Origin: Heteronotia binoei
Taxonomy: Eukaryota
Assembly (NCBI RefSeq): GCF_032191835.1
Contig: NC_083230.1
Location: 84,382,001-84,446,000, forward strand
Direction of reading: 5' to 3'
DNA: 64,000 nt
Position numbers and translations under genes: made by a program. Positions 20,801 to 55,927 of the stretch are shown one piece after another. Every line of letters starts with the position of its first letter. Position 1 is the first letter of the stretch. Below the pieces are notes generated by a model. The model was not told the DNA's origin and did no database searches. It saw nothing but the letters and a program-made list of their open reading frames with translations.

Positions 20801-23800
20801 ATTATACACACACTCAATGATATCCTAGAGCAGGGACCTCCAGCCTTTTTGAGCCTGCAGGCACTTTAGAATTCTGACACAGGGCGGTAGGTGCAACCCC
20901 CTAAAAAAAAGTTGCTACAGGAGGTACACCCAACCACAAAATGTCAGGAAATGAATGCATAAATCTAATAGTAACTCTTCAACATTTATAACTTTTTAAC
21001 TGGCCACAGCCAGTTTATTTTATGAGAAGCTTCCTTGGCAATAGCAATTGGCAGCTAGCATCCTCCAAGACATCTGCGGTTTTCATGTAGTCTGGCAGAC
21101 TGGACTTAAATGGACTTCCCAGCTGGTTTAGGGCTAAAGCCCTCATATTGTCACAAGCTGTTTCAGTGAACACAGAGAAGAAAACTGGATGAAAGCAGCA
21201 CACTAGGTGACTCCTAATTACCTTTCATGTGCTTCCATTAGCTGTGGAGACATAATGCTACAGAGTTCAGCTATACTTTATCACTAGGAAAGGCTGTCAG
21301 AATGTTGAACTATTATGAACCTCTTTGAGATCTAGGGTACGAACAGAACTGGGTGCTTTGCCTGTTCTAATTTAAACAAGATGTTGTATAAAGGCACGGC
21401 CTCCAAAAGAGAATTGTCTTGCCTTACCACCATATTCTTTGTATCAAGTCCTACACATCCCTCAACTACAGAAGGCCAGCTTGAATCTCAAATTCCTCAT
21501 TCCTGATGTATGTGGCATTTAATAAAAGCAAAATTTCTTTTTATAATTTTGGGATCAAAAAATGTACAAAGCCTGTAACAAGAACAGGCTCCCGCTGCCC
21601 TTTGTGGCCTCCACTGGAAAGAGGGAAGGTGTTGTGATTTGTTTCAGTAGAAAAGCCCCCTGCTTTACACACTGGTGCCTGTTGCACTGTCAGCCATCCC
21701 TCTACTCCAAAACACTAAAAGACACAGTACCTCTTCCTTCATCTTCTGTTGTTCTTCCTTTAGTTTGCGCTTTATCTCCTCCACAGCTATTTTCCTCCTC
21801 TCAACCTTTCGCTTGTGGAATCCTGTCAAGTATTCCCTGAGAACACAACCATGGTAAGTTAGCTGCATGGAAGTAAGCCAAAAAGAGAGCCATTTTCTTC
21901 CTGTGGAATTTCACAAACAAGCTAACCACAAACAATCAGCAGACAAAACATGTCATTTAAATTGCCTGCAAGTAACATTTTGTAAAACAAAAGAATAACT
22001 GTACATAAGCATAAAATAAAACCATGCAACTACCAATGCCTAAGCAATGGGTATGCCACAAATCTATTAGAAAAGATTTGGAAAAGATAAATAAAATTAA
22101 TTTTTCCCCACACTGTAAAAATTCCCAGAAAAAATTCCAAAGAAATAAGTAGATTCCACCCCCCCCCCCAAAAAAAACCCAAGAGAGACCTTGTAATAAT
22201 TGGTCATGAGCCTTGGGTCTCAGTCATAGGAAGGGACAACAGGGGGGATCCTGATACATGCTGTGATGCTCTATGCGCTCATCCAAAACCAATGGCAAAG
22301 TTAAGTAGTAGCTAAGTTATATGGATCCTGCTCCTGGCCACTTAACAACCCCTCTAAGTTTCCATGTGGACACATCTATACATGTCCAGGGCTGCCCAGT
22401 TCACCAATGGGCAAACTACGTTTTCTGTGTTTTTTCCTCCTGTTTTAGTGATAAGAGAAAATACATCTGTTTATTTATTTACTATATTTGGAAGTCACTG
22501 TTCTCAATGAGACTCAAAGAAGATTATGTGGTTATAAGTCAATAAGAGGAGACATCTAATAAGCACAATGTTGGTCTCTAAAATTAATATAAGCAATCAA
22601 CTAAATTTCTCTTTTGTAATGCAAACACTAAACCGGGGTGGGGTAGGGATAAAAAGAATGAAGGGTCACTGAGGTACAAGATCTGGTTGTAGCACATTCA
22701 TAAGCTAAAAGATTTCTGACCTGGATGGCCCAGGCTAGTCTGATCTTTTCAGATCTTGGAAGCTAAGCAGAGGCAAGCCCTGGCTAGTGTTGGGATGGGC
22801 AACCTCCAAGGAATACCAGGGGTCTGATGCAGAGCCAGGCAATGGAAAACCACCTCTGAATTGCCTCTTGTCTTGAAAGCAAGTCTAGCTTGCCCCCAGT
22901 CATGCACATTGCAGGCACCTGAATTGCCTCTTGCCTTGAAAGCAAGTCTAGTTTGCCCCTAGTCATGCATAATGCTAAAAGCTAGAACTTCTGGCTGTCA
23001 GACAATCTTAGGATCTCCTTGCTTTACTGCACACACTGCCATGCAATAATCATTATTTATTATTATTTAAAAATACTGCTATTCTTTCACCCCACAAAGA
23101 TCACTGGAGCCAAAGCCCAAACAGCCTAGTCATAGAATCACAGACTCATAGAGTAGGAAAGGACCTCCAGGGTTATCTACTCCAACCCATTGCACAGTGC
23201 AGGAAACTCACAAATACCTCCCCCCAGACTGTGACATCTGCTCCACACCCAGAAGAAGTCCTCAATCAGTGGTAAGCCTGAGTCTGGGTTTTACTATTTC
23301 AGACTAATAGCAAGAGCCAGCATGAATGAATACACCATACAGAGAACTCGAAAGAGACATTGCAGGCACCTAACCTAACCTTCTTCATGACTTGTAATTA
23401 TATATTCTATATGCAGGGATTAGTTCTGTATGGAAGCCTGTTTAACTATCTGCTACCTACAAGACCCTACAACTCAGACACAAAAACGTACATCTCAGCA
23501 AGAACCAGGCCTATTTTGAACATCACACACTCGAATACTCTCACTCAGACCTGAGTCAGTCCCACTGAAGAAGAGGCTGTATGGGCTGTACCCCTAAGCA
23601 CACTAAGAGGAGATGGAGGGTTAGAGAGAGGAAAAGACAGTAGTACCAGACGGATCAAGTCGATGCTTCCCAAATTAGCAACCTGCGGCAGTGAATGTAT
23701 CATCACGGTATTCCTCTGCCAGGGTGGGAAGGGCAATATCCAGAAGAGGGGCGAAGGTCTCCTCTCTCCCCACGTGGTAGCACAACAGTCCAGTCCAGTA

Positions 23801-31364: not shown

Positions 31365-31455
31365 ATGGCTGCAAAAAATCACGGGAATGGTATGGCCCTC
31401 AAGGAAGTGTGCAGAAGAGAAGAAAATGCCTTATGTGCTGACTGTGGGAAACCTG
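31365..31455 (+). CDS. ADAP1-like: ADAP-like exon 1 (MAAKNHGNGMALKEVCRREENALCADCGKP)
   Basis: CADCG first zinc pair; donor G|GTAAGA; phase 1 fits exon 2. Confidence 0.88.
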
Positions 31456-34400
31456 GTAAGACCCTGTTTGTGTGGTGAATGATGATGGAAGAGAGCACAG
31501 GCGGAACCCGGCTAGACCAGGTGATCCTGTCTTAGAGGGAAGGAGAGGAAGGAGCAGCTGCCCTAAGCAATGTTGGCTCTGGGGTCAGAGATGCTGAATT
31601 TTGTCAAGCCTTGTAAAGTCAGGTCACCTGTCAGTGTACATAATGCTGTGCACAGTTGTGCTTATAATGTATACATTAAGGGGGAGGTATTTGTGAATTT
31701 CTTGCATTGTGCAGGGGATTGAACTAGGTGACCTGGGGGGTCCCAGCTCTATGATTCTGTGCAAAAAACCAACTATTTATATCAATTCATTGTTAAGATA
31801 TTGCTCTCCGCAACAGAGACCCTAAAACAGCTTAAACCTCATCCTTACCTTTTCCATTTTGTCCTCCCAACAAAAATCCTCAGAGGTAGGATAGTTTGGG
31901 GGGCAGGGGAGAGACTCGCCCAAGGTCACTCAGTGAACTTCCATGGCACAGTTGGGATTTGAACCTAAGACTTTCAGATCCTAATCTATGAGGGTTGGAT
32001 TCATTTTTTAGGAGGGCCAGATCTGACACAAATGGGACTTTACGGGGCCAGGCCATGTGTGTCATAAAATGTGATGTGAGGTAGCGAAGATATAAACTTT
32101 ATAAAGGACACAGACAAACATCATTAAAGATATTATTTTTATAACTTAAAAATACAAACATGCTTAAAACTTTTGCAATATTTTGTTTAAAATGGAAAGG
32201 TGGAATAGTGGGATTTGGCGATGCAATTTAAAAAATAAAACATCAAGAAAAAGCACAAGGATCACAGCAGAAACTAAAAATATAAAATGCTGTGAGCCTG
32301 GGAAAACAATGAAATGGCTTTGCAAGTCTCTCCTGCCCCCGCCGGGTCTATTCAGATAGGCAATGGCTCTCCAGTGTAATATCCTCCTTTGGCTGTGGGT
32401 TCCCTGGTTAGAGTACTCACTAGGTCAGGTCCATTCAGTAGAGAAAAGCTGGCTCAAAGCATCAACGCTTTATTTGCAAGGACACAATTCCAGGAGGCAT
32501 GAGCTTCAGCTGTCTATATAGGAATGCTGAAAGTGATCTCTACTCCATTGAAACACATTGCAGCACAGACAAAGTTGCAAGGAAAACATGACATGGATTT
32601 TCCATTAAGGTCTCTGGGCCCTATCTATCTGGGCACAGAGACCTTAATGGAAAATAAATTCCACTTTTTATTTTAAAGACAAGGGGAAAAGGCAGGGAAC
32701 TGAAAGAGCAGGGAACTGTGTCAGACTCAGAGTTTCAAAAGATGAAGACAGGAGGAGAAGGAGGATGGAGAAGAGAGCCCTGGGCAGGCCAGTTCTGGCA
32801 TATGAGATGGACATTTGGCACCCCTGTAATCCATCACCCTACCCACTGTACCATGTTGGCTTAGCAATTTGTATAAATCATGCAAATTATGTAAATTTAC
32901 ACATATCTGAAAATTTATTCTGTTCCTGCTAATTCTGAGGAAGATCAGAGAGTTTAAGCACAGAAACCTTACCCGCTGAGTCTGACCACAGGCAAACCTG
33001 TTCAGTTGCCACAAGAAATTATCGTCAACATTTGGCTCTGCCACAGATGATAGTTTGTAGCACTTTGCTCAGGTTATATGTGCCCTGGCCCCTATTTTGA
33101 AAACAAAGATGACTTCCTTCAAACCTAGGACTGTGGACTCTTTCAGGCACCCTTGGCAATAGAGCACCTTATTAACTCTGTAACTTTCTATATAATCTAG
33201 ATGGTGTAAGTTATGTTTCAGGAGAGTGGAAATATGAAAGCTCAGAGATAAATAATGGGCCTTGCAGGTTCCAAGTCCTGTCCCTCCCTATTATTCTGAT
33301 TCTCACCATAACTTTTACTGGTTCTGATCTCAGCCTTGGACCTTTGAAGAAACATAAACAATAAATTAAGATGATAATCAGCAGTACTCAGATTTTTACC
33401 TAAGGAATTTCAGGAATCCTTTATACTTCTGTTCAGACACAGTGGTCATTCAGGAATAGTCCTCTCTGTCAAGAACCAATCCTCCAACCCCTGACCCCAC
33501 TTCTCTTCCACTCAGATCCTGACTGGGCCTCCTACACTTTGGGGGTCTTCATCTGCTTAGACTGTTCAAGGATCCATTGCAATATCCCCAGTGTCAGCAA
33601 AGTTAAGTCGCTCAGGATGGACCGCTGGGATGATGCACAGGTGCAGGTATGTTTGGCTTTGAGGAATGTTTTGCTCCCCTTATGTCTGGGGGCATGCCTC
33701 CTTCTTCCCCTTTTCACTCTCAGTGGCACTGGTGTAGAGATTGTACTGTCTTAAGGATTACTGTTCAGGTTTTCTGTTTGCCAGGTGCCCAAATGAACCC
33801 AGGTAGAAAGTAGCTAGCTAGATCCTGAGTATTGTTCTGAACCAAATTATATCGTACTTGAAAAACAAAACAATCTGAAAATGTCTGGAAATATATTGAA
33901 TCCTGCTGTATTGAATATTTAACCAGAAAATGTTCAAGCTCTTTTCAGCCCTGTAATGCTATATTATTTTAGCAAGTTTGGATTAACTATTATCCTACAT
34001 ACTCCACAGAGACCTAGCTAAATTGTGAGTGCCAATTTCTGTAGCTCGCTCATGGAGAAGCTAACCAGTATGAAATATATGCTCTCTAAAATGAGGTTCT
34101 TTAACATTCTCTGCATTGCTCTACCTCAAGAAGGGAGCAGCGGTGAGAATAATAGATAAAGGACTTTTTGAGTTCTGGTTGCCTGGCCACCTTGAGGAGC
34201 AAAATACAGTTTATACAAAGGCATTGGAGCTAGGTCAGAAAAAGATAATTCCATTTTTGCTTAGTGAAAGGCTGCCATCATCTGCATAGGAGGGACTCTC
34301 TGAGATGCAGCTTTTCCAGTCAGAACTGTGATGGGAAAAGCTGCACCACACACAGTTCAGCTTCTGTGCAACTTTTGAAGCCACCCTCATGGTCAAGACC

Positions 34401-37400
34401 TGACAGTTCTAAGGCCACTTCATACACAATAGCTTTAAACGTGCACCTGAGGTTTTTAAAGCATCCATCTGTTGAAATGTGACTTTTAAATTTAATTTGC
34501 AAAGCACCAGATGCCAGCAAGGCAGCAACAATAATCTATTGTAGAAACAACCAAGGTATCCTTGTGGCACCTTCAACTAACAGATTAATTGTAGCATAAG
34601 CTTTTTTGCTTGTTTTCACAAAATACCATGTGTATCTATTGTGCTAGATAAATAAAAGAATCCCCCAAAGCATTTCAAAAGTGATGAATGCAACAAATAT
34701 ACCTACTTGCCAAGACTTGCGCCAGAGGGGACACCTTCCAGAGAGCTGTAGCTTCCTACTGAATGGATGCTGAGTTGCCTGGTTTGCCTTTGCTGTAATG
34801 TGTGTGAAATGGCCCTTAGCTCAATGGTAGGAGTCCTGGAAAAGGATTCAGTGGAAATCCATCTCCCTCCACTGTTTGCAGGTGGTAAGATTTCACAGCT
34901 CTTAGGAGCAGGAGCATCATTAGAGAAGAGAATGCAAGCTAATTTGTTCATCTTCTTGCATTACAGTTTTTGACCCAACACGGGAATGCAGTGGCCAAAG
35001 CCACATATGAAGCCCATGTTCCTATTTATTATTACCATCCAGTGCACACTGACTGCCAGTAAGTGTCATAAGTTCATCTGGGAGGAGGGCAAAGCGGAGT
35101 GGATGTTATGGGTTTTTTCTACCTATCATTAAGCTGCCATGTCTGTGCTGTGGCTCAGAGGCAGAGCATCTGCTTTGTATGCAGAAGGTTCCTGGTTCAA
35201 TCCCTGTTGTTTCTAGTCAACATGTATGTGTAGTAGGAGATGTGAAAGATATCAGCCTTAGGCCCTGGATTGCTGCTGCCAGTCACAGCAGAACAATACT
35301 ATCCTTGATACACTAATGGTCACAGTTTCAGGCAGCTTCATGTGTTACATTGTAATATCCCCACAGACTCCTAAGAGAACAATGGATACAAGCCAAATAC
35401 CAACGAAAGGAATTCATGGAGCCAGGAAAGCAACTGCCATTTTCCAACGGTAACCATTTTGCAAAGGAATCAGTCCCATTGAATGTTTTTTCAGCAGCCT
35501 TGGGACACAGTGCGAAGGTATCTCCCCACATTACAATTTTAGTGCAACTTTCATAGGTCTGGATGAGACTGATGGTTGTGTTGTACTTCTAATACAGAAG
35601 AGAGAATCTCAACTGGGGAGGCTTTCCCTAGGCATATCACCACAAGGATGGGAGAACATAAGAACATAAGAGAAGCCATGTTAGATCAGGCCAATGGCCC
35701 ATCCAGTCCAACACTCTGTGTCACACAGTGGCAAAAATTTTTTTATATATACACACACACTGTGGCTAATAGCCACTGATGGACCTCTTCTCCATATTTT
35801 TATCTAAACCCCTCTTGAAGCTGGCTATGCTTGTGGCCACACTTGGTGGGATTTCCCCTTCAAGGGGAAGTTGCTGTTTGTTAACCTGGCAAATTTTGGA
35901 CAGTCCATCGGCTCACCATACCAACTGGACAACATAGGTAAATGGGTGAGGTCTTACAACCTTGTCAGCTCTAACTCTGTAATAATCATTAGTCATTAGT
36001 GAATCATAGCAATACAGTATCATCTTATCCTGCACTGTCAGGTTCTAGAGAGGCAGGGAGGTGGTGACGAACAATAACATAATGGGTTTTATTTCTATAA
36101 AACAACTCGTACTGAGAGTACAACTACATGGTACAGGAGATGCAGGCTGCCACTCAAAACAGCAGCCCATTTTTTAGTTCTTTTCCCTCTCCTCGCAGTA
36201 TAATAACAACTTTAAGACCAACCAAGTTTTATTGAGAACACAAGCTTTTGCTAAGCACACTTCATCAGACGAGGGTAATACCTGATCCCCTCATCTGATG
36301 AAGTGTGCTTAGAGAGCACATGAAACTTACGTTCTGAATAAACTTGGTTGGTCTTAAAGGTGCACCTTGACTCCTCCTTTGTTCAGCTGCTTCAGACCAA
36401 CACGGCTGCCCTCTTGGATCTATCTACATACAGTATAATAACAAGTTGCACTTAACTCAGGACATTTTGCATTTCCCTGCTCCCACTTCCCCTATTGGCT
36501 TCTGGTGGTGGGGAAGGGAAGCATAAGATATGATATCATCCCAAAGATAAATGTTGCTATGCACTACACAGGTAAGCACAAACTTATATGGGGATGGTAT
36601 TTTCAGCAGCAGCCCCCTGTGTTTTTCCACCCTGATGTAGTCTTTGTTTTTAAAGATGTGCCATTGCTGCTTGCTGTCAGTAAAGGCTCCTTAATGAAAA
36701 TACAAAATGGTTATTGACTGCATAAATATATCTTCAGAGAAGCTTTGTCAATAATACATTTGCTTCCTGTGTCCCAAGGTCCTGAAATATGAACACTGGT
36801 TCTGAAGATCTTGAAATGTTATTGATATGTGGAAACCCTATTGGCAGGAGTCCTAGAATTGCTCCACCCCCAAAGTGACAGGACACAGCTCTCATTGTTA
36901 GGTTCTGATAGCACCACTCTCCCTGTTTATGTGCATATATGTGAAAAACCACAATGGCAGATTAAGGCCCTTGCAGAATGCTCTTCTGCCTTCTTCGAGC
37001 CCAAGGGCAGGTTATGAAGCAGCGCCATTAAATGACACCATCTTTTTGTGTGAAAACCACAAAAGAAAATACTCAATCTGAAAACCTTCCAGCAGCAAGA
37101 CAGCATTCTTGCTCTCAGTACCTAGCACCCTACCGCTGTCTGAAAGTATGAGGCTGGCACAGCAGAAAAAGAGTGAGAATGTAGGGAGGGGAAACTTTCT
37201 TCCATACCCCTGAATGAGGAGGAGGGAAGAGAAGCAAAATTTCAGGTTCACTTCTCAGTCCCATGGAACTAAAATGCTAAATATATAGCTGCCACCTTTT
37301 CTTCAGGCACAAGTCCTGTACCTGACAGACAGAAATTCAACAGTTCAGCAGTTGAGACTTCAAGTGAAATACACAGGAGCACTGAAAGAAGAAAGGTGCC

Positions 37401-40400
37401 AGACTTTAGCAACTATAAATCAAATATTTGTAGCTGCATGTAGCTTAAGATATTTGTAGCTGCATGTTCCTTAAAATAATCCCCAGGGCCATCTTAACAG
37501 CATTATGGGCCCCGGGCAAAGCAGTGTACTGGGCCCCTACAACTACTTACAGGAATAAAAATGTAAATGGTTGATAAGTCCTGCATCATACACAGATTAG
37601 TATGGGGCCTCTATGCTTGTGGGGCCCACGGGCAAGTGCCCATCAGGCCCATGCATTAAGACAGCCCTGATACTCCCCCCCACTCCTTACCACCTGCCTT
37701 CATAAATAGATGGCTGGAGGAGAAAACTACTTTTCCAAAATAGAGCTTTGGAGTGAAAGATGAAAGGATTTTACCACTGTATGCAGAAGAATAATAAAGG
37801 CTGCTTACTATCACTCTGGCTTTTGCCTACATCTTCTGGCTTGTATTTCCTTTTCTAGGTCTAAAAGAAGGGATCCTGTGGAAAAGAGGCAGAGACAATG
37901 GGCAGTATTTTCCACGGAGGTTCCTCTTGTCTGAGAGAGAGGGGTGTCTCAAGTATTTCACCAAACAGGATGTAAGTAAACATCTGCTTTTGCGTGTATC
38001 CCACCTTTGAACATGTCTCCTTTCTTAGAGGTGGACAGACTAATTTTAGTTCCATAAGTGCTCTTGAGGTATTGTAAAATGTCAGTAAAATTAAGTAATT
38101 TTTCTCAGGTATACTAGAATTAATATATAATTAATATCCTGTGCAATAATGTCTTTTAAGCCTCATGGTCCAGAGAATAACTCCCTGAACTGTTCATTGT
38201 ATCATTGATCACTGAATCAGGTGACTCACCTACTGCATTACTTCCTTTTGTAAAATGCTTTTGAAAGGGAGAAACAATCTTCCCCTTTCTAGAGACAAAT
38301 GCCAGCATTTCTATTAATCACCTAGTTAAACTAAAATACTAGGATTTACCTCTACAAAAGTGAAGCAATCCTGATATGTTCCAGGACCCATCCCACAATG
38401 TCCTTCTACTTCTTGAGCCCCTCTCCTGGGCTCATGCCCTATATAGCACTTTCTTACATGAAGCAGACATTACTGAAAAACTTTCATCTCATCACTTCAG
38501 AAAAGTGCTTAGCTGATTTAACTGGAAGCTTGTGTTAGTCTGAACAGAAGTGTGGCAAGCTGCTTGCATCCTACAGATCTCAAACTTTCCTGCCCTACTG
38601 CGCAGGGGCTTGCCTGTTACTCTCTGTGGTCAAGGATAAAGGAGACCATGAATGCACAATCTTCAACTGCCATATGTTTAGAAGAAAGTAAATTATTGTT
38701 TTGAACCTCCATCATTTTGGAGTTAGGTCACTATTAGCAAGGCCTTCTCCAGCCTTGATCACTCCCTTCCATAGTTTCTACCCTCTGCAAACTATAGTGA
38801 AAAAAAGTATTTTTTTTAAAAAAAATATTTTATTTAGCTCATATAAACAGAGATACAAACAGGAAGGAACCATAAAACCATGAGATACAAACAGGAAGAA
38901 ACCATGAGACCAAACCATAAAAAAATAATGAGCAACATTTAAAAATCTGCTACAAAGCCAAGATTCACAAAGACCAATCACCTAAACTTTGTTGCATTGA
39001 GGGAATTACATCCTTAGAACACAAGAAATCCAGAACTGTTTTCATCATATTCAAATAAAGGAACTATCATGCATGTACCAAAAAAATGGATAATGCATTA
39101 TCCTACCCATCAAAAATTGTTCCCAATTTCTGGTACCATTTTTTGAGTAAAGATCCTGTGAGGGATTTCCAAATTCTGGCAATGGCCAAATGAGCAGAAG
39201 CAACTAATGTAGAAACAAGAGATCTGGTATTTTTATCAAGCAGAGAATCGGCCCAAAAATCCAATAACAAAAATTCTGGGGAATATGACAATGAAAGACC
39301 CACCATGTTGGATATCTCTTTATGAACCACCTTCCAAAAGTCCTAAACAAGATGGCATTTCCACCACATACATAAGGCAGTGCCTTCCTGCTTACAAGAT
39401 CTCCACATAGTGGACTCAAAGACTTGTTCATCAGGTTCAGTTTGTGTGGTGTTAAATACCAATTAGATAACAACTTGTAAAATTGAAGTTTAATGTTCCA
39501 ACAATGGGATTTGTTGGAGGGAGAATTCCATATCTGTTTCCAATCAGATTTGGGGAGGGCAGGGTTTAAAGAATCAGACCTTTATTTTTGTAGGGTTGCG
39601 GGTATTTATGTATTGGTGATAGTAATAATTTATAAAGGTCAGAAATCATGCCTTGTTTACCATCATTCCCATTCCAAATTAAGCCTTCTGTTTGAGTGGC
39701 CAAATCAAATCCTTGAACCTGATCAGATTAGTGATCAGATTTTTTAGTTTATTGATGATTCTCTTAATAGGATTAGCTAACAAAGGCGTACTGCACAACC
39801 CATGAAATCCTATTACTACTTTTTCTTTATCCTCTTCAAATAAACTATGACTATTAACAGCTAGGGCTCTATTTTTAGCATTCAGTCCACTCCTTGTGGA
39901 TACCCCCTCCATATAAATTGTTCTAATTTGCTTTCTCTCTAACAAAATCCTGCTGTAAAATGGAATTTCTCTTAATCCTTAAAAATTGTCCATAAGATTA
40001 TATCTGATGTGTGGTGGGTATGGAAGGACCTAAAACGGAGGGATGAATTTTTATGTGGGTTTTCTAAACAACCTCACTCCTAACCTAATATATGAATCCT
40101 TATACACTACAGTGTCCAAAAATGCAATGGACCTGTCATCCTGATGGAATTTAAACTTAATTGTGACGTGTATTACATCATCTAATTTTTAAAAATCACC
40201 AAACCTTTGCTTATTTCAATAAAACATTTATATAGGACAATTTCATTATAAAAAAAGATTTTGTACTAAATGGCATATTAATGTATTCTCCAAAGTCATC
40301 ATTAAGAGGTTGGCAACTCATGGGGCACAGAGTGGTAAAGCTGCAGTCCTGCAGTCCTAAGCTCTGCTCATGACCTGAGTTTGATTCCAGTGGAAGCTGG

Positions 40401-43400: not shown

Positions 43401-46400
43401 ACTCAGTGCATTCAAAACACTGGCTTTAGAAAACATTTCTTCTTCTGTGGGGCTCTTTTGCAGCAGTTTCCAAGCTTTTCATTATGGATTCCCTCTACCC
43501 TTATCTTGGTTGTCCCAATTTCTTAAACTAAGGTAAATCATAATTTTTGTGCAGCATTGTCCCTAATTTCACATCTGAGAATTTTATGGTCCAACCCAAA
43601 GGCTCTTGTAACTCAGTGATAAGTTCATGAAAGAATCAATATTTAACATATAGAAATTGTGGCTATGTTTTAAGTCCATTTCTGTTTTTCTTCTTTTAAG
43701 GAAGCCCTGGCATTACTCTTTCCTCTCTCTCTCTTTTTTGGCAAGACTTTTTTTTAAAAAAGTGATCTTCTTGTTACAATAACTTTTTGCTTGTGAAATC
43801 CTATAAAGTCCTGTATGCATTGTTGGAATTATATAAATAAGAAAAAGTTTGCTCATTGGGATAGAAAGACAGCTTTGAAAACAGATATGTACACTGAATT
43901 CTCTTTTCCCCTTTAGGCCAAAGAACCAAAAGTAATGATTAAAGTTGACACTATCAATGCCACATTCCAGCCAGAGAAGATTGGGCACTCCAATGGCCTG
44001 CAGATCACCTATCTGAAAGATAACAAGACTCGCAACATCTTCCTCTACCATGAGGATGGAAAGGTACATGAGCCTGGCCTACCTGTATGCTGCAGCGTGT
44101 CCAGGAAATGAGGGAGAAAACCTGGAGTCACTATATTAAATGATCCTAGAGACCTAAGGCCATCACTGGTTCCAGTAAGGATTTTGCGGTCTCTCTTTGT
44201 CCGGGGATTAGGACCTTTCAGGTTCAGGCAGTTACAGGAACTCATTCTTTCTTCCCATCTTCTTCCCAAGGTGAACACACATAGAGAAATAAGCTTAAGC
44301 ATACGGTAGTTTGTAAAACTGTCTTTCGTAGGATATCTTCTAAGATGGAAACAGAGGAGGATGTTCTTTTGGGGCTGTTTTGAATTATAGCTATAGGAGA
44401 TGATCATAGACATTTGCTTGGAAGTTATAGTCTATTGGGCTTTGTGTTCTTGCATTGTCCTTTCAAGGCCTTTATGTCTTCCTAGGAAATAGTGGATTGG
44501 TTCAATGCAATCCGTGCAGTGCTGTTCCACTATCTGAAGGTGGCCTTTCCTGTTGCCAGTGATAAAGAGGTACGAGAATTACAAGCAAGAAGATGTATTG
44601 GCAAGGCTGGACTACAGAGTACTCATTGTCTCAGTGAAGTTCCAAATCTCATTGCTCTTTAGTCATGTACAATCTGAGATGACATAATCAATATGAAGAT
44701 GTGTCCACTCCATGGCCATAGCAATGTTAGGCTTTTTGGTATCCTGGGTAAGATTGCTTCCACACAGAATTTTTGCTTTTATTTTTGCTGTTTTCTGGGG
44801 AAGAATCCACATGATGTTGTCTCTAATAACCCACTTTCCATGTTTCCCCCCACTTTGCTTCAATCTTTTTTGAAAGATTGCAGCCAAAGCAAATTTACAC
44901 GCTGTGTGCTAGGAAGGTGCATGTTTTCTGAAGTTCCCACCCACATTTTAATCAGTATTCCCCCCCCCACCACCACCAGGCATTGGATGGGGGGTTGCTT
45001 TTTGAACATTCACCAAAAAGTCACAACAATATTACATATTACCCCAATTTAGTAACTTCTCTGAGTTCCCAGGTTTTCATTTTTAAAAGTATCTAACCCT
45101 TTTCTTGCAGAGATATAAGGGATTAAGTGGGGAAAATTGGGGGGGGGGGTGTGGCAGCCATGGTGGGCTAAGGGGTAAGGAGAGTTGCCATGTACTTGCA
45201 AATTCCTCTGCATTTGCTGCAGCAACAAGAGCTCTCAAGAAAACCAAGTGAAAGCAGCCTCCGATTATATTGCCTCCCACAACCCCAGTTTAGATATAGT
45301 TTAGATATCTTTCAGGCCATTCTGATAAACTAGTAGCTTGTACTCTTTTATTGTAGCTCAAGAGTCGGCTGACACGGAGCTTCTTGAAAGAAGGCTACAT
45401 GGAGAAGACTGGTCCCAGGGTAGCTCATTTTTAAATTTATATTTCCTTTTTAAAGTAATCTCAAAAGCTTTTTGAAAACATGCACACACAAACCAGATTT
45501 AAACACTTTGTACTGCTATGAAGTGCCAAATGATAGCCCAAATAAGGAGAGATCATAGAATCATAGAGTTGGAAGGGACCTCTAGATCATAATAGCTATC
45601 TCCTGACTTGAGCTGGTCTCCTCAGTGAAGGGGGTTCAGCCCTAGTAATACATGAATGTGAAGCTAACTGTGTAAATTTTAGCAAAACAGTGTACAATTA
45701 TGTCCACACAACATTATCCAGACCCTTTCCCAATTTCAACTTGAACCCCACAGGCTACCTAACCTGGTTGATCTTCAGGCACTTTCAAATGCTACTTGTG
45801 CTTGGATTTTATGAGCACTGGAAATTGGTTTCGCCTCTCATAATGTTTATAAGAATCTCAGGGACTAGGCAGTTTAAAAGCTTGTTGGATTCCCATGTTT
45901 TTTAAGGCAAGACCATAAAATAGGAAAGTACACAAAGGAAAGTGGGGGAAGAGGCAGAGGTTAAAAGTCAGAGCCTTGGGACAAGTATATTAGCCAGGAG
46001 GGAGATGGTCAGGTGTCAGGAGTTCAAAAGAAAGTTCCAAGGGGGAGCAGCAAGAGAGAAAGGGTGAATGGGTGAAAGAGAAATAACCTGAAGTTTAGCC
46101 AAGAGGAAAACATAAAGAAGTCAAAGATAGAGGAAATGCTAAGAACTGGCTGCGTACTGAATGCAAACAAACAGAAGGCCCATTTCAGTCCCCTGCCCCC
46201 TGCCTCCAATGTACAGCCACTATGAAGTGGAAATTTATTCCATTCAGAGGCATTACTAAGATGATGAGTCCAAGTTCATGTGATGTCAGTGATGTGTGGC
46301 TGGATCTCTCAATGTGTCAGCTGCAAAAAACATCAGTAGAGGGAACAATAATATGGATTGGGTGTGTGGCACTGGGAAAAAGGGGATTAATAATCTCTTC

Positions 46401-49400
46401 CCCTTGCCATTTCTATAGTTGAAAATGACCCTGGTTTTAGTTCTGTAAAGGAGAAGAGAGGTACAGTAGAGGGACCCGCCTTCTCATCTCATCCCTTAAC
46501 ACACTTAGAAATAATCCAGGAGAACATTTTTATCAGGAAAATGGCACAGATAAAAAGGTAACCCATTTTCCCATCACCGTGGCCCCAGTTAATATCTCCA
46601 CACACAAAGCTGCTGTTTGCACATAAGTTACACATTTTTTGGGATCCAGCAACCCATAGTCTGGCTGTATTTCTGCACTGGCAATTTCACAGTTGCTTCT
46701 GATGTAGTTGTCTCACTGAAGCAGGTCTGTACCTGAATGCAGCACTACTGAGGAATTGAGCTCTTAGGGAAGTTTGGGATAGAAATGTAACGATTCTGCA
46801 CCCACGCTATCCCAAAACCACTTCACTCCAAAACTACCACTACTCTGTCAGATGCACCATAGACTTGAATGCAACTGTGGTGTGATTTTCCAATTCTCAC
46901 CAGAAGAGGGCTTTCTTCTCTCATGTCTTGGTTCTCTTTCACAGCAAAAGGAACCCTTCAAGAAACGCTGGTTTACATTGGACCATCGCAGACTCATGTA
47001 CTTCAAGGATCCTTTGGTAAGCCAGGCTTCAAACTGAATTTTCCTTACCTCCTTTTAGCCTAGATATGGCCATTCTCTTGTTTGAAATAAGAATATGGGG
47101 GACCAACTTCTGAATTAAGCCATTTTAGCTCCTTTCATAATTTGGATTGATTTCTGTTGATTTCTGCACTTCAAAGCCATGGCCAGAGGAAACAGAAGCT
47201 GGCCACAGTAGTTTTCCTCTAGCTAACTGGCAATTCTAAATAAGAGAGAAGGGACAACTCCTCAAAAATCTAGGGCTGTGGATCCCTTCTTTCCATATAG
47301 GATTAGTCATAATCATTGAGGATACCTTGGCAAGGCTCACTCTCTTCCCCAGATTCTGTGCCTCTATTCCTGCCACCCAGATCCTTGCTTTATTCCCACT
47401 CACATCCTCCAACCCCTGCCAAATAGTACTGTTCTTGACAGATTATTAAATCCAGCTGCTGCTACATCAGGTTAGCAAAATGAGAAGGGGGAAAGGCAGA
47501 AGACAGGAAAATAAATTCTCCAGTTGTGTACACTGGAGCACATACTTGACCAGGCAGCTTTTAGAGAAGACCAGGTTTTTGCAGATAACTTTTTCTAGCC
47601 GGTTGCCATGTAAGAAACCTGGTCTGTCTGGGGTTTCTTATGCTCCTGGTTCAGGTTCTGGTGAAGGGCTTAAGACCTGACAGGAAAGGAAAACTAAAAG
47701 ATGACATAGAGCCAACTTTCTAGCTCACCTCAAATTCTTGAGAGACAGACTGGGTTTGAATCTTAGACTGGTGTTTTCACAGCAGCCAAGTTATCCAACA
47801 ACTGGTTGCTTGACACTCATACAAAGCGAGAGATCAAGATCATCCTTCTTTTAGTCTCTCCAGAAGATCACCTTGGTGGTTCAGTTTTTCCAGCTTCATA
47901 TTGTGGTTTCAGTCTCTTGTTTTTTTATAATGGACCATAGCAAGAAAACATCACTGTCTAGAAGTCAACAACAATAAAAAGGGGAGTTTTTTCTGCTTTG
48001 TTTCTGTTCAGAAGCAGCATCTGAGACACTTCCAAGAGATCTCTCAGCACCAGATACACAACACCACACAGTTGTACTTTGTCATCAGATCAGCTATAGT
48101 CTACTTGTAGTGGCCTGAACCTGGAACTTAGATAAGCTGCCTTCTCTTTCTTGGCTTTTTACTGGCCTAGAGGGAAAAGTAGTGTGGGAAAAGTAGCATC
48201 TGTGGCAACATAACTGGTCTAAAACATGCAGCTGAATGATATTGTAATATTGGGCACAGTGATAGGATGTTCCACTGCAGATATGGATAACATTTTTCAA
48301 ATCTCCCCTATGTTAATCCTGTTTTGCAGAGGAAATCTAGCACAGCACACAAAGGGCTAAGCTAGAACTTTTCTCCCTAATGTGCTTTAAAAAAAAACTT
48401 GCAAAGACTTTTTGCCTGGAAATGTGACACACTCCATCTGCAGTCTAAAATGGTAGAGCCCATTCTACCAATTTAGAATTTTATGACCTCATTTTGTTGC
48501 GCAAAATGACCAGCCACTTTAAGGGATGGAGTCGCTGTTCTGTCTACTCACAGGCCCTTCATGGTACCCTTCCAGAAAAACTAGATGGGGTCTAGAAGTT
48601 TTGCCACTAACATGGATCCTGACAGGTCTCCCATTTTCTTCCATCACACAGGATGCTTTTGCTAAAGGTGAAGTATTTGTGGGCAGTGGAGAGAATGGGT
48701 ACAGTGTCAAGCAAGGGTTACCGGCAGGGGTGCAGGGAAGCTTTACCTGGCCATACGTCATCACCATTGTCACCCCTGACCGTAATTACCTTTTTACCTG
48801 TGAGACGGAGCAAGATCAGCAAGAGTGGGTTGCAGCCTTCAGCCATGTTATAGAGCAGCCCATGACACCTCAGGAGTATGCAAGTAAGTGCCAGAGGTAG
48901 CTGTACTTTGTGTATCTTTTGTTCTGGGGTTCTGTGTCAGAATTTATCATTTGTTTATTGATATTACTGATAGCTGTGTTCCCCATTTTTAAAAATGACC
49001 AAAGCGACTTATAGCAAGATTAATAAAAAGTATATTTTGTAAACTGTTAAAATCCTATCAATAATAAAAGTAGGTAAGAGGAGCATTAATAATAATTCTT
49101 ACATTTAAATAGTCCTTATTCAAGCACGAATTTCAAGATGCTTCCTGTATGTTAGTTCTATAATTTTTAGAAAACAATCTTGCAAGGTAAGTTAGTATCA
49201 TCCCCATACTGCATATGGAAATAAAGTTGAAACTGTGGGAAACTGTGGGTTTGCCTCATGTACCACCAGGCTAGATTTTGAACCTTTTGGTTCACAGCTT
49301 AGTCATTAAGTAAAAATACTGCCCCAAAGTCGAATTCTGTGACATGTCTAAATCATGCAGATTAAATAAAAATGCACATATTTACTTATATAGTATAATT

Positions 49401-51729
49401 TGATCTGTTTTTGTAAGTTATATTGTAAGCCAAAATGCCCTCAAAACTGAGGTTGGGGAATTGTCAGGTGGGCACCTGGCTTAATCAGGATCTTTTTACC
49501 TATGTATACAGGATCCACATCCAGAAATTAATGCTTAAATTTATCAAGGACTCTAATTAAGTAAAAGCAATTAAAATTTATTCCAGAAAAATATAGGCTT
49601 ACATACAAGACAAGTAATTCACAAAACACACATACAGTCCTAAGAAAAATAGAGAGAGATATAGAGACAACACATGGGTAGACAAACAGGGTGATAATTA
49701 CCGATCGTAGTCTTCAAGGAAGGCTCCAATGGTGACAAAAGAGGACGGGGGAAATGGGACCCTCAACTGTGGCCAGAATCGGGGATGGATCTAGACAGTG
49801 GAACTGGGGTACTGCTAGATGCACACCTGAGTGGAGCTGGGTCAGAGGTTAAATAGACTACCTTGAACCCTCAGGGGATGGGAGGTACGGGGAGGAGAAA
49901 GGGGAGGCTCTGCAGTGACCATAAGGGCTGGACTTCTGCATTAGCCAATAGCAAGTTAATTGGTGGCACCTAATTGGGTGCCCATAACTGACCAATGAAC
50001 AAGCTTGGACCCGGGTTACCTTATTGGCTGTACAGGTAATCATGGGTCAAGGGGGAGGCTCCAGGATGACAGTGGGGGAGAGGAATAGGAGAAATTACTG
50101 GGTGGAGGGGTGCTTAAGATTATTAAACTTATCTAAAAAGGTTACAATAGATGGCCAAATTACTACCTAGGTAACACCCAGTTTGCACAAAGGAACTTGG
50201 CTCTGGCTGAAGATGGTCTTCCTCTTCTTTAGTGTTCTTCTTGCCACCAGTCTTTGTCTTGAGTTCCGTTGGACAAAGGCTTAGGTGGTCTGGCGGGGTC
50301 CACGCCTGGATAAGCTTGATGGCTCCTTGGGTGGGTAACATCTATTGCGTACGTGTGCTTCCCGTTGTGCTGAAATGGAGTCTTGGCACTGCTGGAAGAT
50401 AGCTGGTGTTAGCCTCCCAAAGTGGATTCTATGGTCAAGGCTGAAAACCGCGTGGCCTGGATAGCTCCTAATGGTGCACTTTCTTCTGCTCCAAGATAGA
50501 GACAGCGTTCGCCTGAAGCAACTGGAAACCATCCGTTCTCCTTGCTGGCACTCTTCCAGGGACACAGAGCGCTGCTTTAGCGTTGTGGCTGTTAGTACTC
50601 ATAAGTCCCTTCCAGTCGGTTGGCAAATTCACGTCCTTCTGGCAGATGTGTGTGAGCTCTGTCTCCAGGCACTCTGGCAACCAGACGGGTGACTACGATG
50701 TTCTGGAAATTAGGGGCATTTCTTTACAATATGGCAAAGCAGAGATTGCTAAACACTAAATGTTATTATCCCTCACCATTGCCCTCAGACTTTTGAAAAT
50801 CCTATCACCAGGTAATATCCCATACATTTTGAAGCTTTTCATAGGGCCAAAGTAGATGCAACAGTGTCCACAGGTCCGACCTGCAGACACTACTGCTATT
50901 TTAAAGCCTTATGAGGCAATTTAAAAATGCCACAAAGGTGTGGAAGGATGAGGTGCTCCTCTCCCCCCCTCCTTGCCTTTTTTAAGTGCTGAAACATTTT
51001 TCCCTATAGCTGTTTTGCCCCTATGGCTGTTTTGGAACTTGAAAGGGTACAGGGAGGAACAAGAGTACCTCATCCTGCCATTCTGTGGACCAATCAGGAT
51101 CAGATCCTCATGGTATTTTTAAAATCACTTAATTAGGCTTTAGAATGGCAGCAGCATTCATGAGTCCGATCCATGGATGCCGTCACATTTATCTTGGTCC
51201 CAGCGCTGGCTCTATGGAACTGCCACAAGCCTGGCAACCTAAGCAGGGTGCCCTGCCCCCACCCCACCCTCAGTGAAAGTGACCAGGGCAGCAGTGCTCC
51301 TGTGCCTCAGAACACGCTGTGAGGCTGCTGTAGCTCTGCCCCCTATATCTGATGCACAAGGCAGAGTAACAGGCAGCCTCACGGTGTGCTCTGAGGTGCT
51401 GGCACACTGGCGCTCCAGTCACTTTTGCCAGTATTTCCCTCACCACAGAGGCGAGGGTGGGTGAGAGGGCCAAAGGGCCCTATCCCAAGGCCCACACTGG
51501 CACCCTTGCCAGGTCAGCGCCCCAGGCAGCTGCCTAAGTCTGCCTAGTGCATGGGCCGGCCCTGTTTGGTCCACAGTCATAGGGTCTACAAACTTGTTTT
51601 AGAAAAAAATAAACCTATGCTCAACACTGAATTCAGTGCTAACACATAGTTGCAGAATTGCTATTTCCCCCCTCTAACATAGTTTCTGCTTCTTCTACAG
51701 CTGAAGCTTATTTCAAGCTCAAGCCCTGA
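31365..51729 (+). CDS. ADAP1-like: ArfGAP with dual PH domains (ADAP1/centaurin-alpha-like paralogue), 11 exons, 378 aa; join(31365-31455,33516-33646,34967-35058,35367-35449,37859-37971,43917-44063,44486-44569,45357-45419,46945-47016,48652-48883,51701-51729)
   Basis: Exons 91+131+92+83+113+147+84+63+72+232+29=1137 nt, open frame, all GT-AG. CxxC-x16-CxxC ArfGAP zinc finger, PH1 (LWKRGRDNGQ), PH2 (GYMEKTGP..FKKRWF) and C-terminus EAYFKLKP (human ADAP1 EAHFKHKP). Confidence 0.93.
33516..33646 (+). CDS. ADAP1-like: ADAP-like exon 2 (DPDWASYTLGVFICLDCSRIHCNIPSVSKVKSLRMDRWDDAQVQ)
   Basis: Acceptor ttccactcag|, donor CAG|GTATGT; ArfGAP core. Confidence 0.95.
34967..35058 (+). CDS. ADAP1-like: ADAP-like exon 3 (FLTQHGNAVAKATYEAHVPIYYYHPVHTDCQ)
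   Basis: Acceptor ttacag|, donor CA|GTAAGT. Confidence 0.93.
35367..35449 (+). CDS. ADAP1-like: ADAP-like exon 4 (LLREQWIQAKYQRKEFMEPGKQLPFSN)
   Basis: Acceptor ccccacag|, donor G|GTAACC. Confidence 0.93.
35653..35838 (-). mobile_element. Short CR1 3' end, same young subfamily as 52478-54043
   Basis: Near-identical to 52478-52660 including the agaacataagaacataag tail. Confidence 0.9.
36186..36423. mobile_element. Penelope-terminus-type hairpin repeat with hammerhead-like core
   Basis: Inverted arms taagcacacttcatcagacgaggg / cccctcatctgatgaagtgtgctta; CTGATGA..GAAA core; 3' motif ggtcttaaaggtgc..cagaccaacacggctgcc; related copies ~265-365, 820-905, 24925-25050, 26745-26840, 34530-34610. 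Confidence 0.6.
37484..37669. mobile_element. hAT-type MITE
   Basis: TIRs CAGGGCCATCTTAA / TTAAGACAGCCCTG; TSD ATAATCCC/ATACTCCC. Confidence 0.8.
37859..37971 (+). CDS. ADAP1-like: ADAP-like exon 5, PH1 start (GLKEGILWKRGRDNGQYFPRRFLLSEREGCLKYFTKQD)
   Basis: Acceptor ttttctag|, donor GAT|GTAAGT. Confidence 0.95.
38808..39640 (-). mobile_element. Degenerate L1/Tx1-clade LINE 3' fragment in ADAP-like intron 5
   Basis: WYLTPHKL..SPL(CWRSCKQEGTALCMWWKC) zinc-knuckle-like segment and LAIARIWK..KKWYQKL, typical of the L1 ORF2 C-terminus; AATAAA and A-rich 3' end near 38810-38835. Confidence 0.7.
40315..40613 (+). mobile_element. Sauria SINE nested in the Penelope-like element
   Basis: Same family as 30090-30387; ACCTTT tail. 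Confidence 0.9.
41176..41377. mobile_element. hAT-type MITE with internal duplication and octamer motifs
   Basis: (C)AGG(A/G)C(C/T)TTTTTT..AAAAAAGCCCTG ends; gaaaaagcccagcagg..atttgcatattaggccacac present twice; related copy 60085-60252. Confidence 0.65.
43917..44063 (+). CDS. ADAP1-like: ADAP-like exon 6 (AKEPKVMIKVDTINATFQPEKIGHSNGLQITYLKDNKTRNIFLYHEDGK)
   Basis: Acceptor ttttcccctttag|, donor AAG|GTACAT. Confidence 0.95.
44486..44569 (+). CDS. ADAP1-like: ADAP-like exon 7 (EIVDWFNAIRAVLFHYLKVAFPVASDKE)
   Basis: Acceptor tcttcctag|, donor GAG|GTACGA. Confidence 0.94.
45357..45419 (+). CDS. ADAP1-like: ADAP-like exon 8 (LKSRLTRSFLKEGYMEKTGPR)
   Basis: Acceptor ttttattgtag|, donor AGG|GTAGCT. 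Confidence 0.92.
46945..47016 (+). CDS. ADAP1-like: ADAP-like exon 9, PH2 (QKEPFKKRWFTLDHRRLMYFKDPL)
   Basis: Acceptor ctctttcacag|, donor TTG|GTAAGC. Confidence 0.95.
48652..48883 (+). CDS. ADAP1-like: ADAP-like exon 10 (DAFAKGEVFVGSGENG...PMTPQEYA)
   Basis: Acceptor catcacacag|, donor A|GTAAGT. Confidence 0.95.
49424..50727 (-). mobile_element. Solo LTR (Gypsy or gamma-like ERV) in ADAP-like intron 10, antisense
   Basis: TGTAA...TTACA termini with short imperfect inverted ends (aatgccc/gggcatt), 4-bp TSD ATAT on both sides, AATAAA on - strand at 49577-49582. Confidence 0.7.
51201..51564. mobile_element. hAT-type MITE
   Basis: TIRs CAGCGCTGGC / GCCGGCCCTG; TSD CTTGGTCC/TTTGGTCC. Confidence 0.7.
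51701..51729 (+). CDS. ADAP1-like: ADAP-like exon 11, coding part (TEAYFKLKP*)
   Basis: Acceptor cttcttctacag|, TGA at 51727-51729; matches ADAP1 terminal EAHFKHKP. Confidence 0.9.
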
Positions 51730-55398: not shown

Positions 55399-55927
55399 GA
55401 CCAGCCTCCATTGCTGTCTCCTCAATGTCTTGTCAGATTTATCTCAACCTTGGTTTTCAGATTGCTGGCAATACTGCTAGCCTTTTAAAGTTCTCTGTGG
55501 CTTCCTTCAGGACAAAAAAGAAGACTGCTTCCAGAAAGCCACATGTCTCTTCCAGAACCAGACTAAATGTCATCATGCTATCAGGATACCTGTTGCAACT
55601 CCATAATTTTCAGTATATTCAGCAAGGTGTGGTCCCTGGGGTTTCAAAACAGTAGTTGTTGTGTTCCAGCATCAGCAGGGGTGTTTGTGTGCTTTTGTGT
55701 CTGTTCATTGGTTGGCAGATGAGCCCACTGGCTGAGGAAAGAGCGAAGGAAAGGGGAAGGCAAATGGATAGAAGGCCAGCTGCTGGAAATGATCACAATT
55801 CCATGCTTCTGTTCATTATGGGGAACAGGAAGCCAGCACAGAAAAGAACTGGCTTTCTTTCAAATGAAATGGTTTTCAAAAAAGGACTACAGCTGTCTTA
55901 GATGCACACTGTAAGAGCATGATTTGT

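What the first reader, a model, noticed from the sequence alone, without database searches (positions are those of the whole stretch)
33554..33580. Intact ADAP-family gene whose ArfGAP arginine finger is naturally replaced by cysteine: candidate pseudo-GAP PIP3 adaptor
Seen: exon 2 reads C44-L-D-C47-S-R49-I-H-C52 (codon TGC at 33578-33580). The ArfGAP signature is CX2CX16CX2CX4R, and human ADAP1 reads CLSCSGIHR, so the catalytic Arg is Cys here and the conserved Gly three residues earlier is Arg (AGG, 33569-33571). The rest is intact: 11 exons in frame, four Zn cysteines, the DPDW Trp, the S-L-x-M-D Asp, and the PH1/PH2 phosphoinositide-binding Arg (R152 and R276, equivalent to ADAP1 R149 and R273). 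The WIRAKYE motif has also drifted to WIQAKYQ. Established: ADAP1 (centaurin-alpha1) is a PIP3-dependent ARF6 GAP, and substituting R49 (R49C/R49K-type mutants) inactivates it. Inference: this paralogue may be a catalytically dead PIP3-binding scaffold or dominant-negative ARF6 regulator. Alternatively the Arg has moved about one helical turn (i-3) and still acts as the finger. CGC->TGC is also a typical CpG transition, so a recent private mutation is possible.
Basis: partly seen in the sequence, partly recalled or inferred. Interest (0 to 1): 0.8.

Follow-up and report, generated by a model that had tools for sequence, protein, structure and literature searches.

The report
Gecko ADAP1L with moved arginine finger
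In a gecko's intact, conserved ADAP1-like gene the catalytic arginine of the ArfGAP domain is replaced by cysteine while a new arginine sits one helical turn earlier; the pair is fixed in gekkonid geckos, so it is a natural test of whether a GAP's arginine finger can be moved.

Summary
Window 31365-51729 (+) holds an intact 11-exon, 378-aa gene. Its exon 2 reads CLDCSRIHC where human ADAP1 and this genome's own ADAP1 read C..CSGIHR.

The gene is ADAP1L. This old paralogue lies between NOL12 and a urotensin-receptor-like gene and occurs in a caecilian, tuatara, squamates, turtles, alligator and birds. It is sister to all jawed-vertebrate ADAP1. The protein is 100% identical to RefSeq "ADAP1-like [Heteronotia binoei]".

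The change is neither private nor an assembly error. Gekko japonicus and G. kuhli also carry Arg49 plus Cys52. Every other orthologue, including the gecko Euleptes, keeps Gly and Arg (ancestral codons GGG and CGC). Only three residues changed on the gekkonid stem: G49R, R52C and Y130F.

Since then the ArfGAP domain has stayed under purifying selection (omega 0.13, against 0.17-0.21 for the PH domains). Arg49 is kept through a codon change (AGG versus CGG). A relative makes correctly spliced transcripts. An unidentified, deeply diverged squamate carries the same pair, so the two sites probably changed together more than once.

I favour a moved arginine on a still-used Arf-facing surface (about 45%) over a dead PIP3 adaptor (about 40%). 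Only a GAP assay can decide between them.

The parts
31365..31455 (+). ADAP1L coding exon 1 (Met1 to first base of codon 31; Zn ligands C24, C27)
   Evidence: donor GTAAGA. A spliced contig of a relative joins it to exon 2.
33516..33646 (+). Exon 2: core of the ArfGAP zinc finger, C44-L-D-C47-S-R49-I-H-C52
   Evidence: Pfam ArfGap E 3.5e-14
33569..33571 (+). Codon 49, AGG = Arg, where Gly is ancestral (GGG in Rhineura and Gopherus; CGG = Arg in Gekko)
   Evidence: 33569 A>C in two relatives
33578..33580 (+). Codon 52, TGC = Cys, at the arginine-finger position (ancestral CGC)
34967..35058 (+). Exon 3 (ArfGAP domain)
   Evidence: splice joint seen in a relative's contig
35367..35449 (+). Exon 4 (end of ArfGAP domain; WIQAKYQ motif)
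37859..37971 (+). Exon 5 (PH1, KRGRDNGQ; R152)
43917..44063 (+). Exon 6 (PH1)
44486..44569 (+). Exon 7 (PH1 C-terminal helix and linker)
45357..45419 (+). Exon 8 (start of PH2)
46945..47016 (+). Exon 9 (PH2, KKRWFTL; R276)
48652..48883 (+). Exon 10 (PH2)
   Evidence: Pfam PH
51701..51729 (+). Exon 11 with stop codon TGA

Best explanation
The gene is ADAP1L, an ancient paralogue of ADAP1 (centaurin-alpha-1) that mammals lack. It has an ArfGAP zinc-finger domain followed by two PH domains that keep their phosphoinositide-binding residues. On the stem of gekkonid geckos the canonical arginine finger changed to Cys (R52, CGC to TGC). The otherwise invariant Gly three residues earlier changed to Arg (G49, GGG to AGG or CGG).

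Shown: the pair is fixed in Heteronotia and two Gekko species. The gene is intact, a relative transcribes and splices it, and its ArfGAP domain has stayed under purifying selection at least as strong as that on the PH domains. Both residues lie in one short helix (45-52), one turn apart and so on nearly the same face.

Inferred: the arginine was moved rather than lost. The Arf-facing surface is still used, with Arg49 supplying the positive charge and possibly the catalytic finger. The PH domains would still bring the protein to PIP3-containing membranes. I expect Arf6-directed activity that depends on R49 and is probably weaker or altered.
For: 1. Co-occurrence. Every carrier of Cys52 also has Arg49: Heteronotia, G. 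japonicus, G. kuhli and the unidentified species in L001/L036. All 15 or so other ADAP1L orthologues have Gly and Arg.
2. Stem changes. Only three unambiguous residue changes map to the gekkonid stem: G49R, R52C and Y130F.
3. Arg49 is kept with different codons: AGG in Heteronotia, CGG in both Gekko species and in two relatives' contigs.
4. Selection, Heteronotia versus G. japonicus, both after the swap: overall omega 0.18; ArfGAP 0.13 (core 0.09); PH1 0.21; PH2 0.17. For comparison, the ArfGAP core of the canonical pair Rhineura/Gopherus gives 0.07.
5. Exon 2 of the unidentified species against the window gives dS 0.50, dN 0.11, omega 0.22. Its third-position identity to geckos (70-74%) is about the same as to Rhineura (70%). 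It lacks D46 and V57, which all geckos share. With the two trait columns masked it groups with Rhineura (88/89), and placing it with gekkonids has AU p = 0.037. The pair therefore probably changed in concert more than once.
6. The side chain at position 49 is tolerated. Teleost ADAP1 copies carry L, A or D there together with an intact Arg finger.
7. The AF2 model (pLDDT 87.9) puts residues 45-52 in one helix.
8. Transcription. An 832-nt contig of a relative joins exons 1-2-3-4 at my junctions.
Against: Even the conservative R49K change is used as a GAP-deficient mutant of human ADAP1, as are the equivalent changes in ASAP1 and ACAP1 (PMC6892435, PMC4337568). The geometry is therefore demanding, and an arginine one turn away may not reach the gamma-phosphate.

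GAP-like domains that lose the finger usually become binders rather than enzymes (my own knowledge). ADAP1 has documented GAP-independent functions (PMC6892435), which alone could explain the purifying selection.

Two other conserved ArfGAP residues had already changed in the gecko stem before the swap (R113Q, E117Q). This hints at earlier drift of catalytic function.

The independent-origin argument rests on 41 amino-acid columns, and the nucleotide tree does not resolve it. No structural or biochemical test of R49 reaching the active site could be run.
Confidence: 0.45

Rival explanations
1. Catalytically dead pseudo-GAP. Gekkonid ADAP1L no longer stimulates GTP hydrolysis. It acts as a PIP3-recruited adaptor, or as a binder or sequestrator of Arf6-GTP or of other partners of the ArfGAP domain such as KIF13B. 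Arg49 would be charge or binding compensation, or a by-product of released constraint.
For: The canonical finger is gone, and R49K is enough to disable human ADAP1 (PMC6892435, PMC4337568; mechanism reviewed in PMC6724607). ADAP1 has GAP-independent roles (PMC6892435), and KIF13B is a listed ADAP1 interactor (PMC6724607). The PH-domain ligand residues are intact. Earlier gecko-stem changes fall in conserved ArfGAP positions (R113Q, E117Q). Teleost ADAP1 duplicates have also replaced the finger (K in P0186, P0226 and P0230; G in P0210) with no Arg at i-3, so ADAP duplicates do lose the finger.
Against: It does not predict the strict pairing of G49R with R52C or the retention of Arg49 across codons and lineages. 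It also does not predict an ArfGAP core that is as constrained as in canonical orthologues.
Confidence: 0.4
2. Neutral decay. After the loss of ADAP2 in squamates and with ADAP1 intact, gekkonid ADAP1L is dispensable and drifting towards a pseudogene. The two changes would have no functional meaning.
For: The overall omega of the gekkonid pair (0.18) is somewhat higher than in deeper canonical comparisons (about 0.10), although dS there is saturated. One oligo-dT RNA run of a relative (X30) showed no reads on the exons.
Against: All three gekkonids have an intact frame and canonical splice sites. Omega is well below 1 in every domain. Spliced transcripts occur in two relatives. Only three residues changed on the stem.
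Confidence: 0.08
3. Assembly error or a rare private allele in the sequenced individual.
For: No reads of this species could be examined.
Against: The same two residues occur in independent assemblies of G. japonicus and G. kuhli, and in two runs of another species.
Confidence: 0.01

Closest known systems
Human/mammalian ADAP1 (centaurin-alpha-1), PDB 3FEH, 3FM8
   Same: The architecture is the same: an ArfGAP zinc finger plus two PH domains. It is 68-69% identical over the full length (E 1.7e-181). It shares the same 11 coding exons (own-genome ADAP1), the Zn cysteines and the PIP3-binding arginines.
   Different: It is a different paralogue, with a different chromosome and neighbours, and it is sister to all gnathostome ADAP1. 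The finger Arg is Cys and the Gly at i-3 is Arg.
ADAP1L of other sauropsids and a caecilian (RefSeq 'ADAP1-like'; named ADAP1L in PMC13005343)
   Same: These are orthologues. The clade is monophyletic at 100/98 and follows the species tree. A tortoise has the same gene order, NOL12 - ADAP1L - 7TM receptor - galectin. All are 378 aa and 74-93% identical.
   Different: All of them, including the gecko Euleptes europaea, keep the canonical CSGIHR. Only gekkonids and one unidentified squamate read CSRIHC.
Laboratory GAP-deficient mutants ADAP1 R49K (and R49C, from my memory of Venkateswarlu et al. 2004; not found in the searchable library)
   Same: They replace the same residue.
   Different: The natural variant adds an Arg at i-3 and has been kept by selection in at least two genera.
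Teleost ADAP1 duplicates lacking the finger Arg (P0186 icefish, P0226/P0230 mormyrids: Lys; P0210 delta smelt: Gly)
   Same: They are ADAP-family duplicates in which the finger residue was replaced naturally.
   Different: They belong to a different paralogue (true ADAP1 duplicates), have no compensating Arg at i-3, and were not examined further.

Membership tests
ADAP (centaurin-alpha) family | N-terminal ArfGAP domain with a CX2CX16CX2C zinc finger | tested here: met
   C24, C27, C44 and C47 are present and invariant. Pfam ArfGap hit on exon 2; PF01412 on P0299.
ADAP (centaurin-alpha) family | Two PH domains with phosphoinositide-binding basic residues | tested here: met
   PF00169 is listed for the identical protein P0299, and PH is listed twice for the G. 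japonicus orthologue. R152 is invariant and R276 at least 90% conserved, and both are kept. Full-length alignment to 3FM8/3FEH.
Catalytically competent ArfGAP | Arginine finger four residues after the fourth Cys (CX2CX4R) | tested here: not met
   Cys52 (TGC, 33578-33580) aligns with R49 of human ADAP1. The position is R in 145 of 150 ArfGAP representatives.
Catalytically competent ArfGAP | Stimulates GTP hydrolysis on ARF6 | not testable with these tools
   This needs a biochemical assay. The complex prediction with the genome's own ARF6 gave no answer.
ADAP1L orthology group | Clusters with sauropsid and caecilian ADAP1-like proteins, separate from ADAP1 and ADAP2 | tested here: met
   Tree: ADAP1L clade 100/98, sister to gnathostome ADAP1 at 87/95. 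A very recent duplication from this genome's own ADAP1 is rejected (AU p = 0.003).
ADAP1L orthology group | Conserved neighbours: NOL12 upstream on the opposite strand, a 7TM receptor downstream | tested here: met
   Window: Nop25 exon at 21716-21910 (-) and a 7tm_1 ORF at 62534-63760 (+). The Gopherus locus L028 has the same order.
Pseudo-GAP (GAP fold without catalysis) | Loss of the catalytic residue together with retained fold and selection | tested here: inconclusive
   The canonical residue is lost and the fold and selection are retained. An Arg one helical turn away may substitute, and activity is unknown.

The most novel reading that the evidence does not exclude
The catalytic arginine of an ArfGAP domain has been moved by one helical turn (R52C plus G49R), and this coupled swap happened at least twice in squamates: in gekkonid geckos and in an unidentified, deeply diverged lineage. 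Alternatively it arose once and was reversed in Euleptes. Either way it would be a natural, selected example of arginine-finger repositioning in a small-GTPase GAP, with catalysis depending on the new arginine.
Probability: 0.3. Interest if true: 0.8.

Novelty: new variant of a known kind. Interest (0 to 1): 0.6.

Why it matters
The arginine finger is the defining catalytic element of ArfGAPs, and mutating it is the standard way to make a dead GAP. Here evolution made that mutation, added an arginine one turn away, and then kept the domain under purifying selection in at least two gecko genera, probably repeating the swap elsewhere.

This gives a simple and decisive experiment. Wild type, R49G, C52R and the double revertant can be compared, with Euleptes as the natural canonical control. 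The result would show whether a GAP finger can be repositioned, or whether these ADAP proteins work chiefly as PIP3 and Arf6 adaptors.

It also bears on how squamates manage ARF6 and PIP3 signalling. They have lost ADAP2 (PMC13005343), so gekkonids may have only one canonical ADAP GAP.

Tried and rejected
- Homologue search with the exon-2 ORF alone found only P0001, because the length filter excludes full-length proteins.
- Profiles built from a distant scaffold plus separate exon rows (A1, A2) were misaligned by MAFFT and discarded. What worked was a profile of 'junk + exon 2 + junk' ORFs led by a 224-aa row (A3).
- The look-up of sequencing runs found no run of this species, so raw reads at 33569 and 33578 could not be checked.
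- Read laying on four relatives listed no change at 33578-33580. The list of differences was truncated (48 not shown), so codon 52 in those runs is not strictly proven. The one true RNA-seq run (X30) had no reads on the exons, which shows nothing either way.
- Complex prediction of the ArfGAP domain with the genome's ARF6, GTP and Mg gave 'no answer' (score 0.09). It is not evidence either way.
- No DNA was on record for Euleptes.
- The nucleotide tree of exon 2 cannot place the unidentified species.
- Paper searches for R49C with centaurin or ARF6, and for SRR31946006, found nothing.
- The idea that the window gene is the ADAP2 orthologue was rejected. It is 54-56% identical to ADAP2 against 63-69% to ADAP1, and it falls outside the ADAP2 clade.
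- The spliced 378-aa protein was never typed into a tool. The identical database entry P0299 was used once it had been found.

Full report
**Observation.** Exon 2 lies at 33516-33646 on the + strand, bounded by AG and GT. It translates to (D)PDWASYTLGVFICLDCSRIHCNIPSVSKVKSLRMDRWDDAQVQ. Against the solved structures of human centaurin-alpha-1 (3FEH, 3FM8) the alignment is gap-free. It pairs the window's C-S-R-I-H-C with the human C-S-G-I-H-R. So AGG at 33569-71 replaces the conserved Gly, and TGC at 33578-80 replaces the arginine finger (human R49). The position is Arg in 145 of the 150 best ArfGAP cluster representatives.

**Gene model.** Eleven coding exons run from 31365 to 51729. All have canonical AG/GT borders and together give an open 378-aa frame. 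[quoted passage not shown] The window therefore almost certainly comes from that gecko, and my model equals the RefSeq model. The Zn cysteines, W34 and R152 are invariant columns of a 28-sequence ADAP alignment, and D66 and R276 are at least 90% conserved; all are kept here.

**Which gene it is.** The same genome has a canonical ADAP1 on another chromosome (C20). It has the same 11 exons, reads CSGIHR, and is 84-100% identical to bird ADAP1 in its well-matched exons. No ADAP2 was found. This agrees with a 2026 paper that reports ADAP2 deleted in squamates with the paralogue 'ADAP1L' retained (PMC13005343).

A profile search centred on exon 2 retrieved named relatives of the window gene. They come from geckos, the amphisbaenian Rhineura, tuatara, six turtles, alligator, ratites, owls, a parrot and a caecilian. 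In a maximum-likelihood tree they form one clade (100/98) that follows the species tree. That clade is sister to all jawed-vertebrate ADAP1, sharks included (87/95), with ADAP2 outside. A very recent duplication from this genome's own ADAP1 is rejected (AU p = 0.003).

Synteny agrees. The window has a NOL12 exon on the minus strand at 21716-21910 (Pfam Nop25) and a single-exon urotensin-2-receptor-like gene at 62534-63760. The tortoise locus has the order NOL12 - ADAP1L - 7TM receptor - galectin. From my own knowledge, the human NOL12/LGALS1 region (22q13.1) is a known paralogon of 7p22, where ADAP1 lies. That fits an ancient ohnologue lost in mammals. I did not test this beyond the tree and the two loci.

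**Distribution of the change.** CSRIHC occurs in Heteronotia, Gekko japonicus and G. kuhli, all Gekkonidae. CSGIHR occurs in every other ADAP1L seen, including the sphaerodactylid gecko Euleptes europaea, which is 91.5% identical to the window protein.

The codons are:
- Rhineura and Gopherus: GGG / CGC
- Heteronotia: AGG / TGC
- both Gekko species: CGG / TGC

On the gekkonid stem only three unambiguous residue changes are inferred: G49R, R52C and Y130F. Two of three hits fall on two otherwise invariant sites three residues apart, which is not chance. At the nucleotide level, one origin of Arg49 followed by AGG-to-CGG is as parsimonious as two independent origins from GGG.

**A second carrier.** Two Logan contigs come from runs SRR31946006 and SRR31946008. 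They are 99.75% identical to each other, so they represent one species and two samples. They hold an orthologous exon 2 with AGG / TGC.

This exon is only 85% identical to the gekkonid exons. Against the window, dS is 0.50, dN 0.11 and omega 0.22. Third-codon-position identity is 70-74% to geckos and 70% to Rhineura, and the introns do not align beyond about 55 bases. The exon lacks D46 and V57, which Euleptes and the gekkonids share. It shares L43 and D71-E72 with Rhineura.

With columns 49 and 52 masked, the amino-acid tree joins it to Rhineura (88/89). Holding it with gekkonids is disfavoured (AU p = 0.037; with all geckos p = 0.063). The 125-base nucleotide tree is unresolved.

The species is unidentified. 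The divergence makes a position nested next to Gekkonidae unlikely. The pair of sites therefore most probably changed in concert at least twice, either as two gains or as one gain and a reversal in Euleptes.

**Selection and expression.** Heteronotia and G. japonicus both descend from an ancestor that already had the swap. Their comparison (Nei-Gojobori method) gives:

| Region | dS | dN | omega |
|---|---|---|---|
| Whole CDS | 0.173 | 0.031 | 0.18 |
| ArfGAP (1-128) | 0.223 | 0.030 | 0.13 |
| ArfGAP core (16-121) | 0.260 | 0.024 | 0.09 |
| PH1 | 0.104 | 0.022 | 0.21 |
| PH2 | 0.185 | 0.032 | 0.17 |

The canonical pair Rhineura/Gopherus gives 0.07 for the ArfGAP core, with saturated dS. So there is no sign that the ArfGAP domain was released from constraint.

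Contigs of public runs from relatives were laid on the window. One 832-nt contig joins exons 1-2-3-4 exactly at my junctions, and another run shows the 1-2 and 3-4 joints. The gene is therefore transcribed and correctly spliced in at least two relatives. Those contigs carry 33569 A>C (CGG, still Arg). No change at 33578-80 was listed, although the list was truncated.

**Structure.** An AlphaFold2 model built from the 28-sequence alignment has mean pLDDT 87.9. It places residues 45-52 in one short helix, so positions 49 and 52 are one turn apart on nearly the same face. Teleost ADAP1 copies carry Leu, Ala or Asp at the Gly position together with an intact finger. A side chain there is therefore tolerated. 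A complex prediction with the genome's own ARF6 gave no answer.

**Interpretation.** The following is established. The finger arginine is inserted into the Arf nucleotide site, and its mutation abolishes GAP activity (PMC6724607). ADAP1 R49K is used as a GAP-deficient mutant. ADAP1 has both GAP-dependent and GAP-independent roles (PMC6892435, PMC4337568).

The canonical mechanism cannot operate in gekkonid ADAP1L. Two readings remain.

- *Moved arginine.* This fits the strict pairing of G49R with R52C, their probable repeated joint change, the retention of Arg49 across codons, and the undiminished constraint on the ArfGAP core.
- *Dead adaptor.* This fits the severity of even R-to-K mutations, the general fate of finger-less GAP domains, the earlier gecko-stem changes R113Q and E117Q, and the finger-less teleost ADAP1 duplicates that have no compensating arginine.

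I put about 45% on a moved arginine serving a still-used Arf-facing surface, with catalysis possible but unproven. I put about 40% on a catalytically dead PIP3/Arf6 adaptor, about 8% on neutral decay, and about 1% on an artefact.

**Novelty.** ADAP1L exists in automatic annotation and is named in one 2026 paper. I found no description of the gekkonid finger replacement in the searchable library. It is a new variant of a known kind of protein. It is of real interest to GAP enzymologists because a four-mutant assay would settle the question.

Noticed in passing
window 21716-21910 (-): An exon of NOL12 (Pfam Nop25, E 3.8e-12; [16 protein letters not shown]...) lies upstream of ADAP1L on the opposite strand. 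A tortoise has the same arrangement (L028).
   Followed up: partly
window 62534-63760 (+): An intact single-exon 409-aa rhodopsin-type receptor. Its best solved relative is the urotensin-2 receptor (E 6.6e-88). A 404-aa 7tm_1 gene sits at the same place in the tortoise, followed by a galectin gene. It is probably a UTS2R paralogue that mammals lack at the LGALS1-NOL12 locus.
   Followed up: partly
window 52588-54066 (-) and 16737-17264 (-): Reverse-transcriptase ORFs (Pfam RVT_1; 493 aa and 176 aa) of LINE-like retroelements flank the gene. A shorter repeat with the ORF '...KNIREAMLDQANGPSSPTLCVTQWQK...' occurs at about 35573-35776 and about 52403-52585.
   Followed up: no
own genome G000 (searches with bird ADAP1 and ADAP2): No ADAP2 locus was found. 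The best matches to bird ADAP2 are ADAP1 (C20) and the window gene (C8). This agrees with the published loss of ADAP2 in squamates (PMC13005343).
   Followed up: partly
P0186, P0226, P0230, P0210 (teleost ADAP1 / ADAP1-like proteins): Natural replacements of the finger Arg in teleost ADAP1 duplicates: Lys in an icefish and two mormyrids, Gly in delta smelt. A whole teleost ADAP1 clade reads CSLLHR, with Leu at the conserved Gly.
   Followed up: no
window codons 113 and 117 (exon 4, 35367-35449): WIRAKYE became WIQAKYQ (R113Q, E117Q) on the gecko stem. Euleptes, which keeps the canonical finger, shares the change. A relative's contig also changes residues 117/118 (35402, 35405, 35406).
   Followed up: partly
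G000:C21:6517385-6520897 (L029) and G000:C17:50786737-50790249 (L030): Two intronless 175-aa ARF6-type ORFs. The C21 copy matches ARF6 as I recall it. The C17 copy differs at several residues and may be a second ARF6-like gene or a retrocopy.
   Followed up: no
window about 54000-55500: A GC-rich stretch (GC 0.51 against about 0.43 around it) lies between ADAP1L and the receptor gene. It has long ORFs on both strands but no Pfam match, and may be a CpG island or promoter.
   Followed up: no
P0298 (Gekko kuhli, 338 aa): The deposited protein model is garbled between residues about 106 and 170 compared with its relatives. It looks like a mis-annotated exon rather than a real difference. Its exon 2 DNA (L037) is intact and reads CGG/TGC.
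   Followed up: partly
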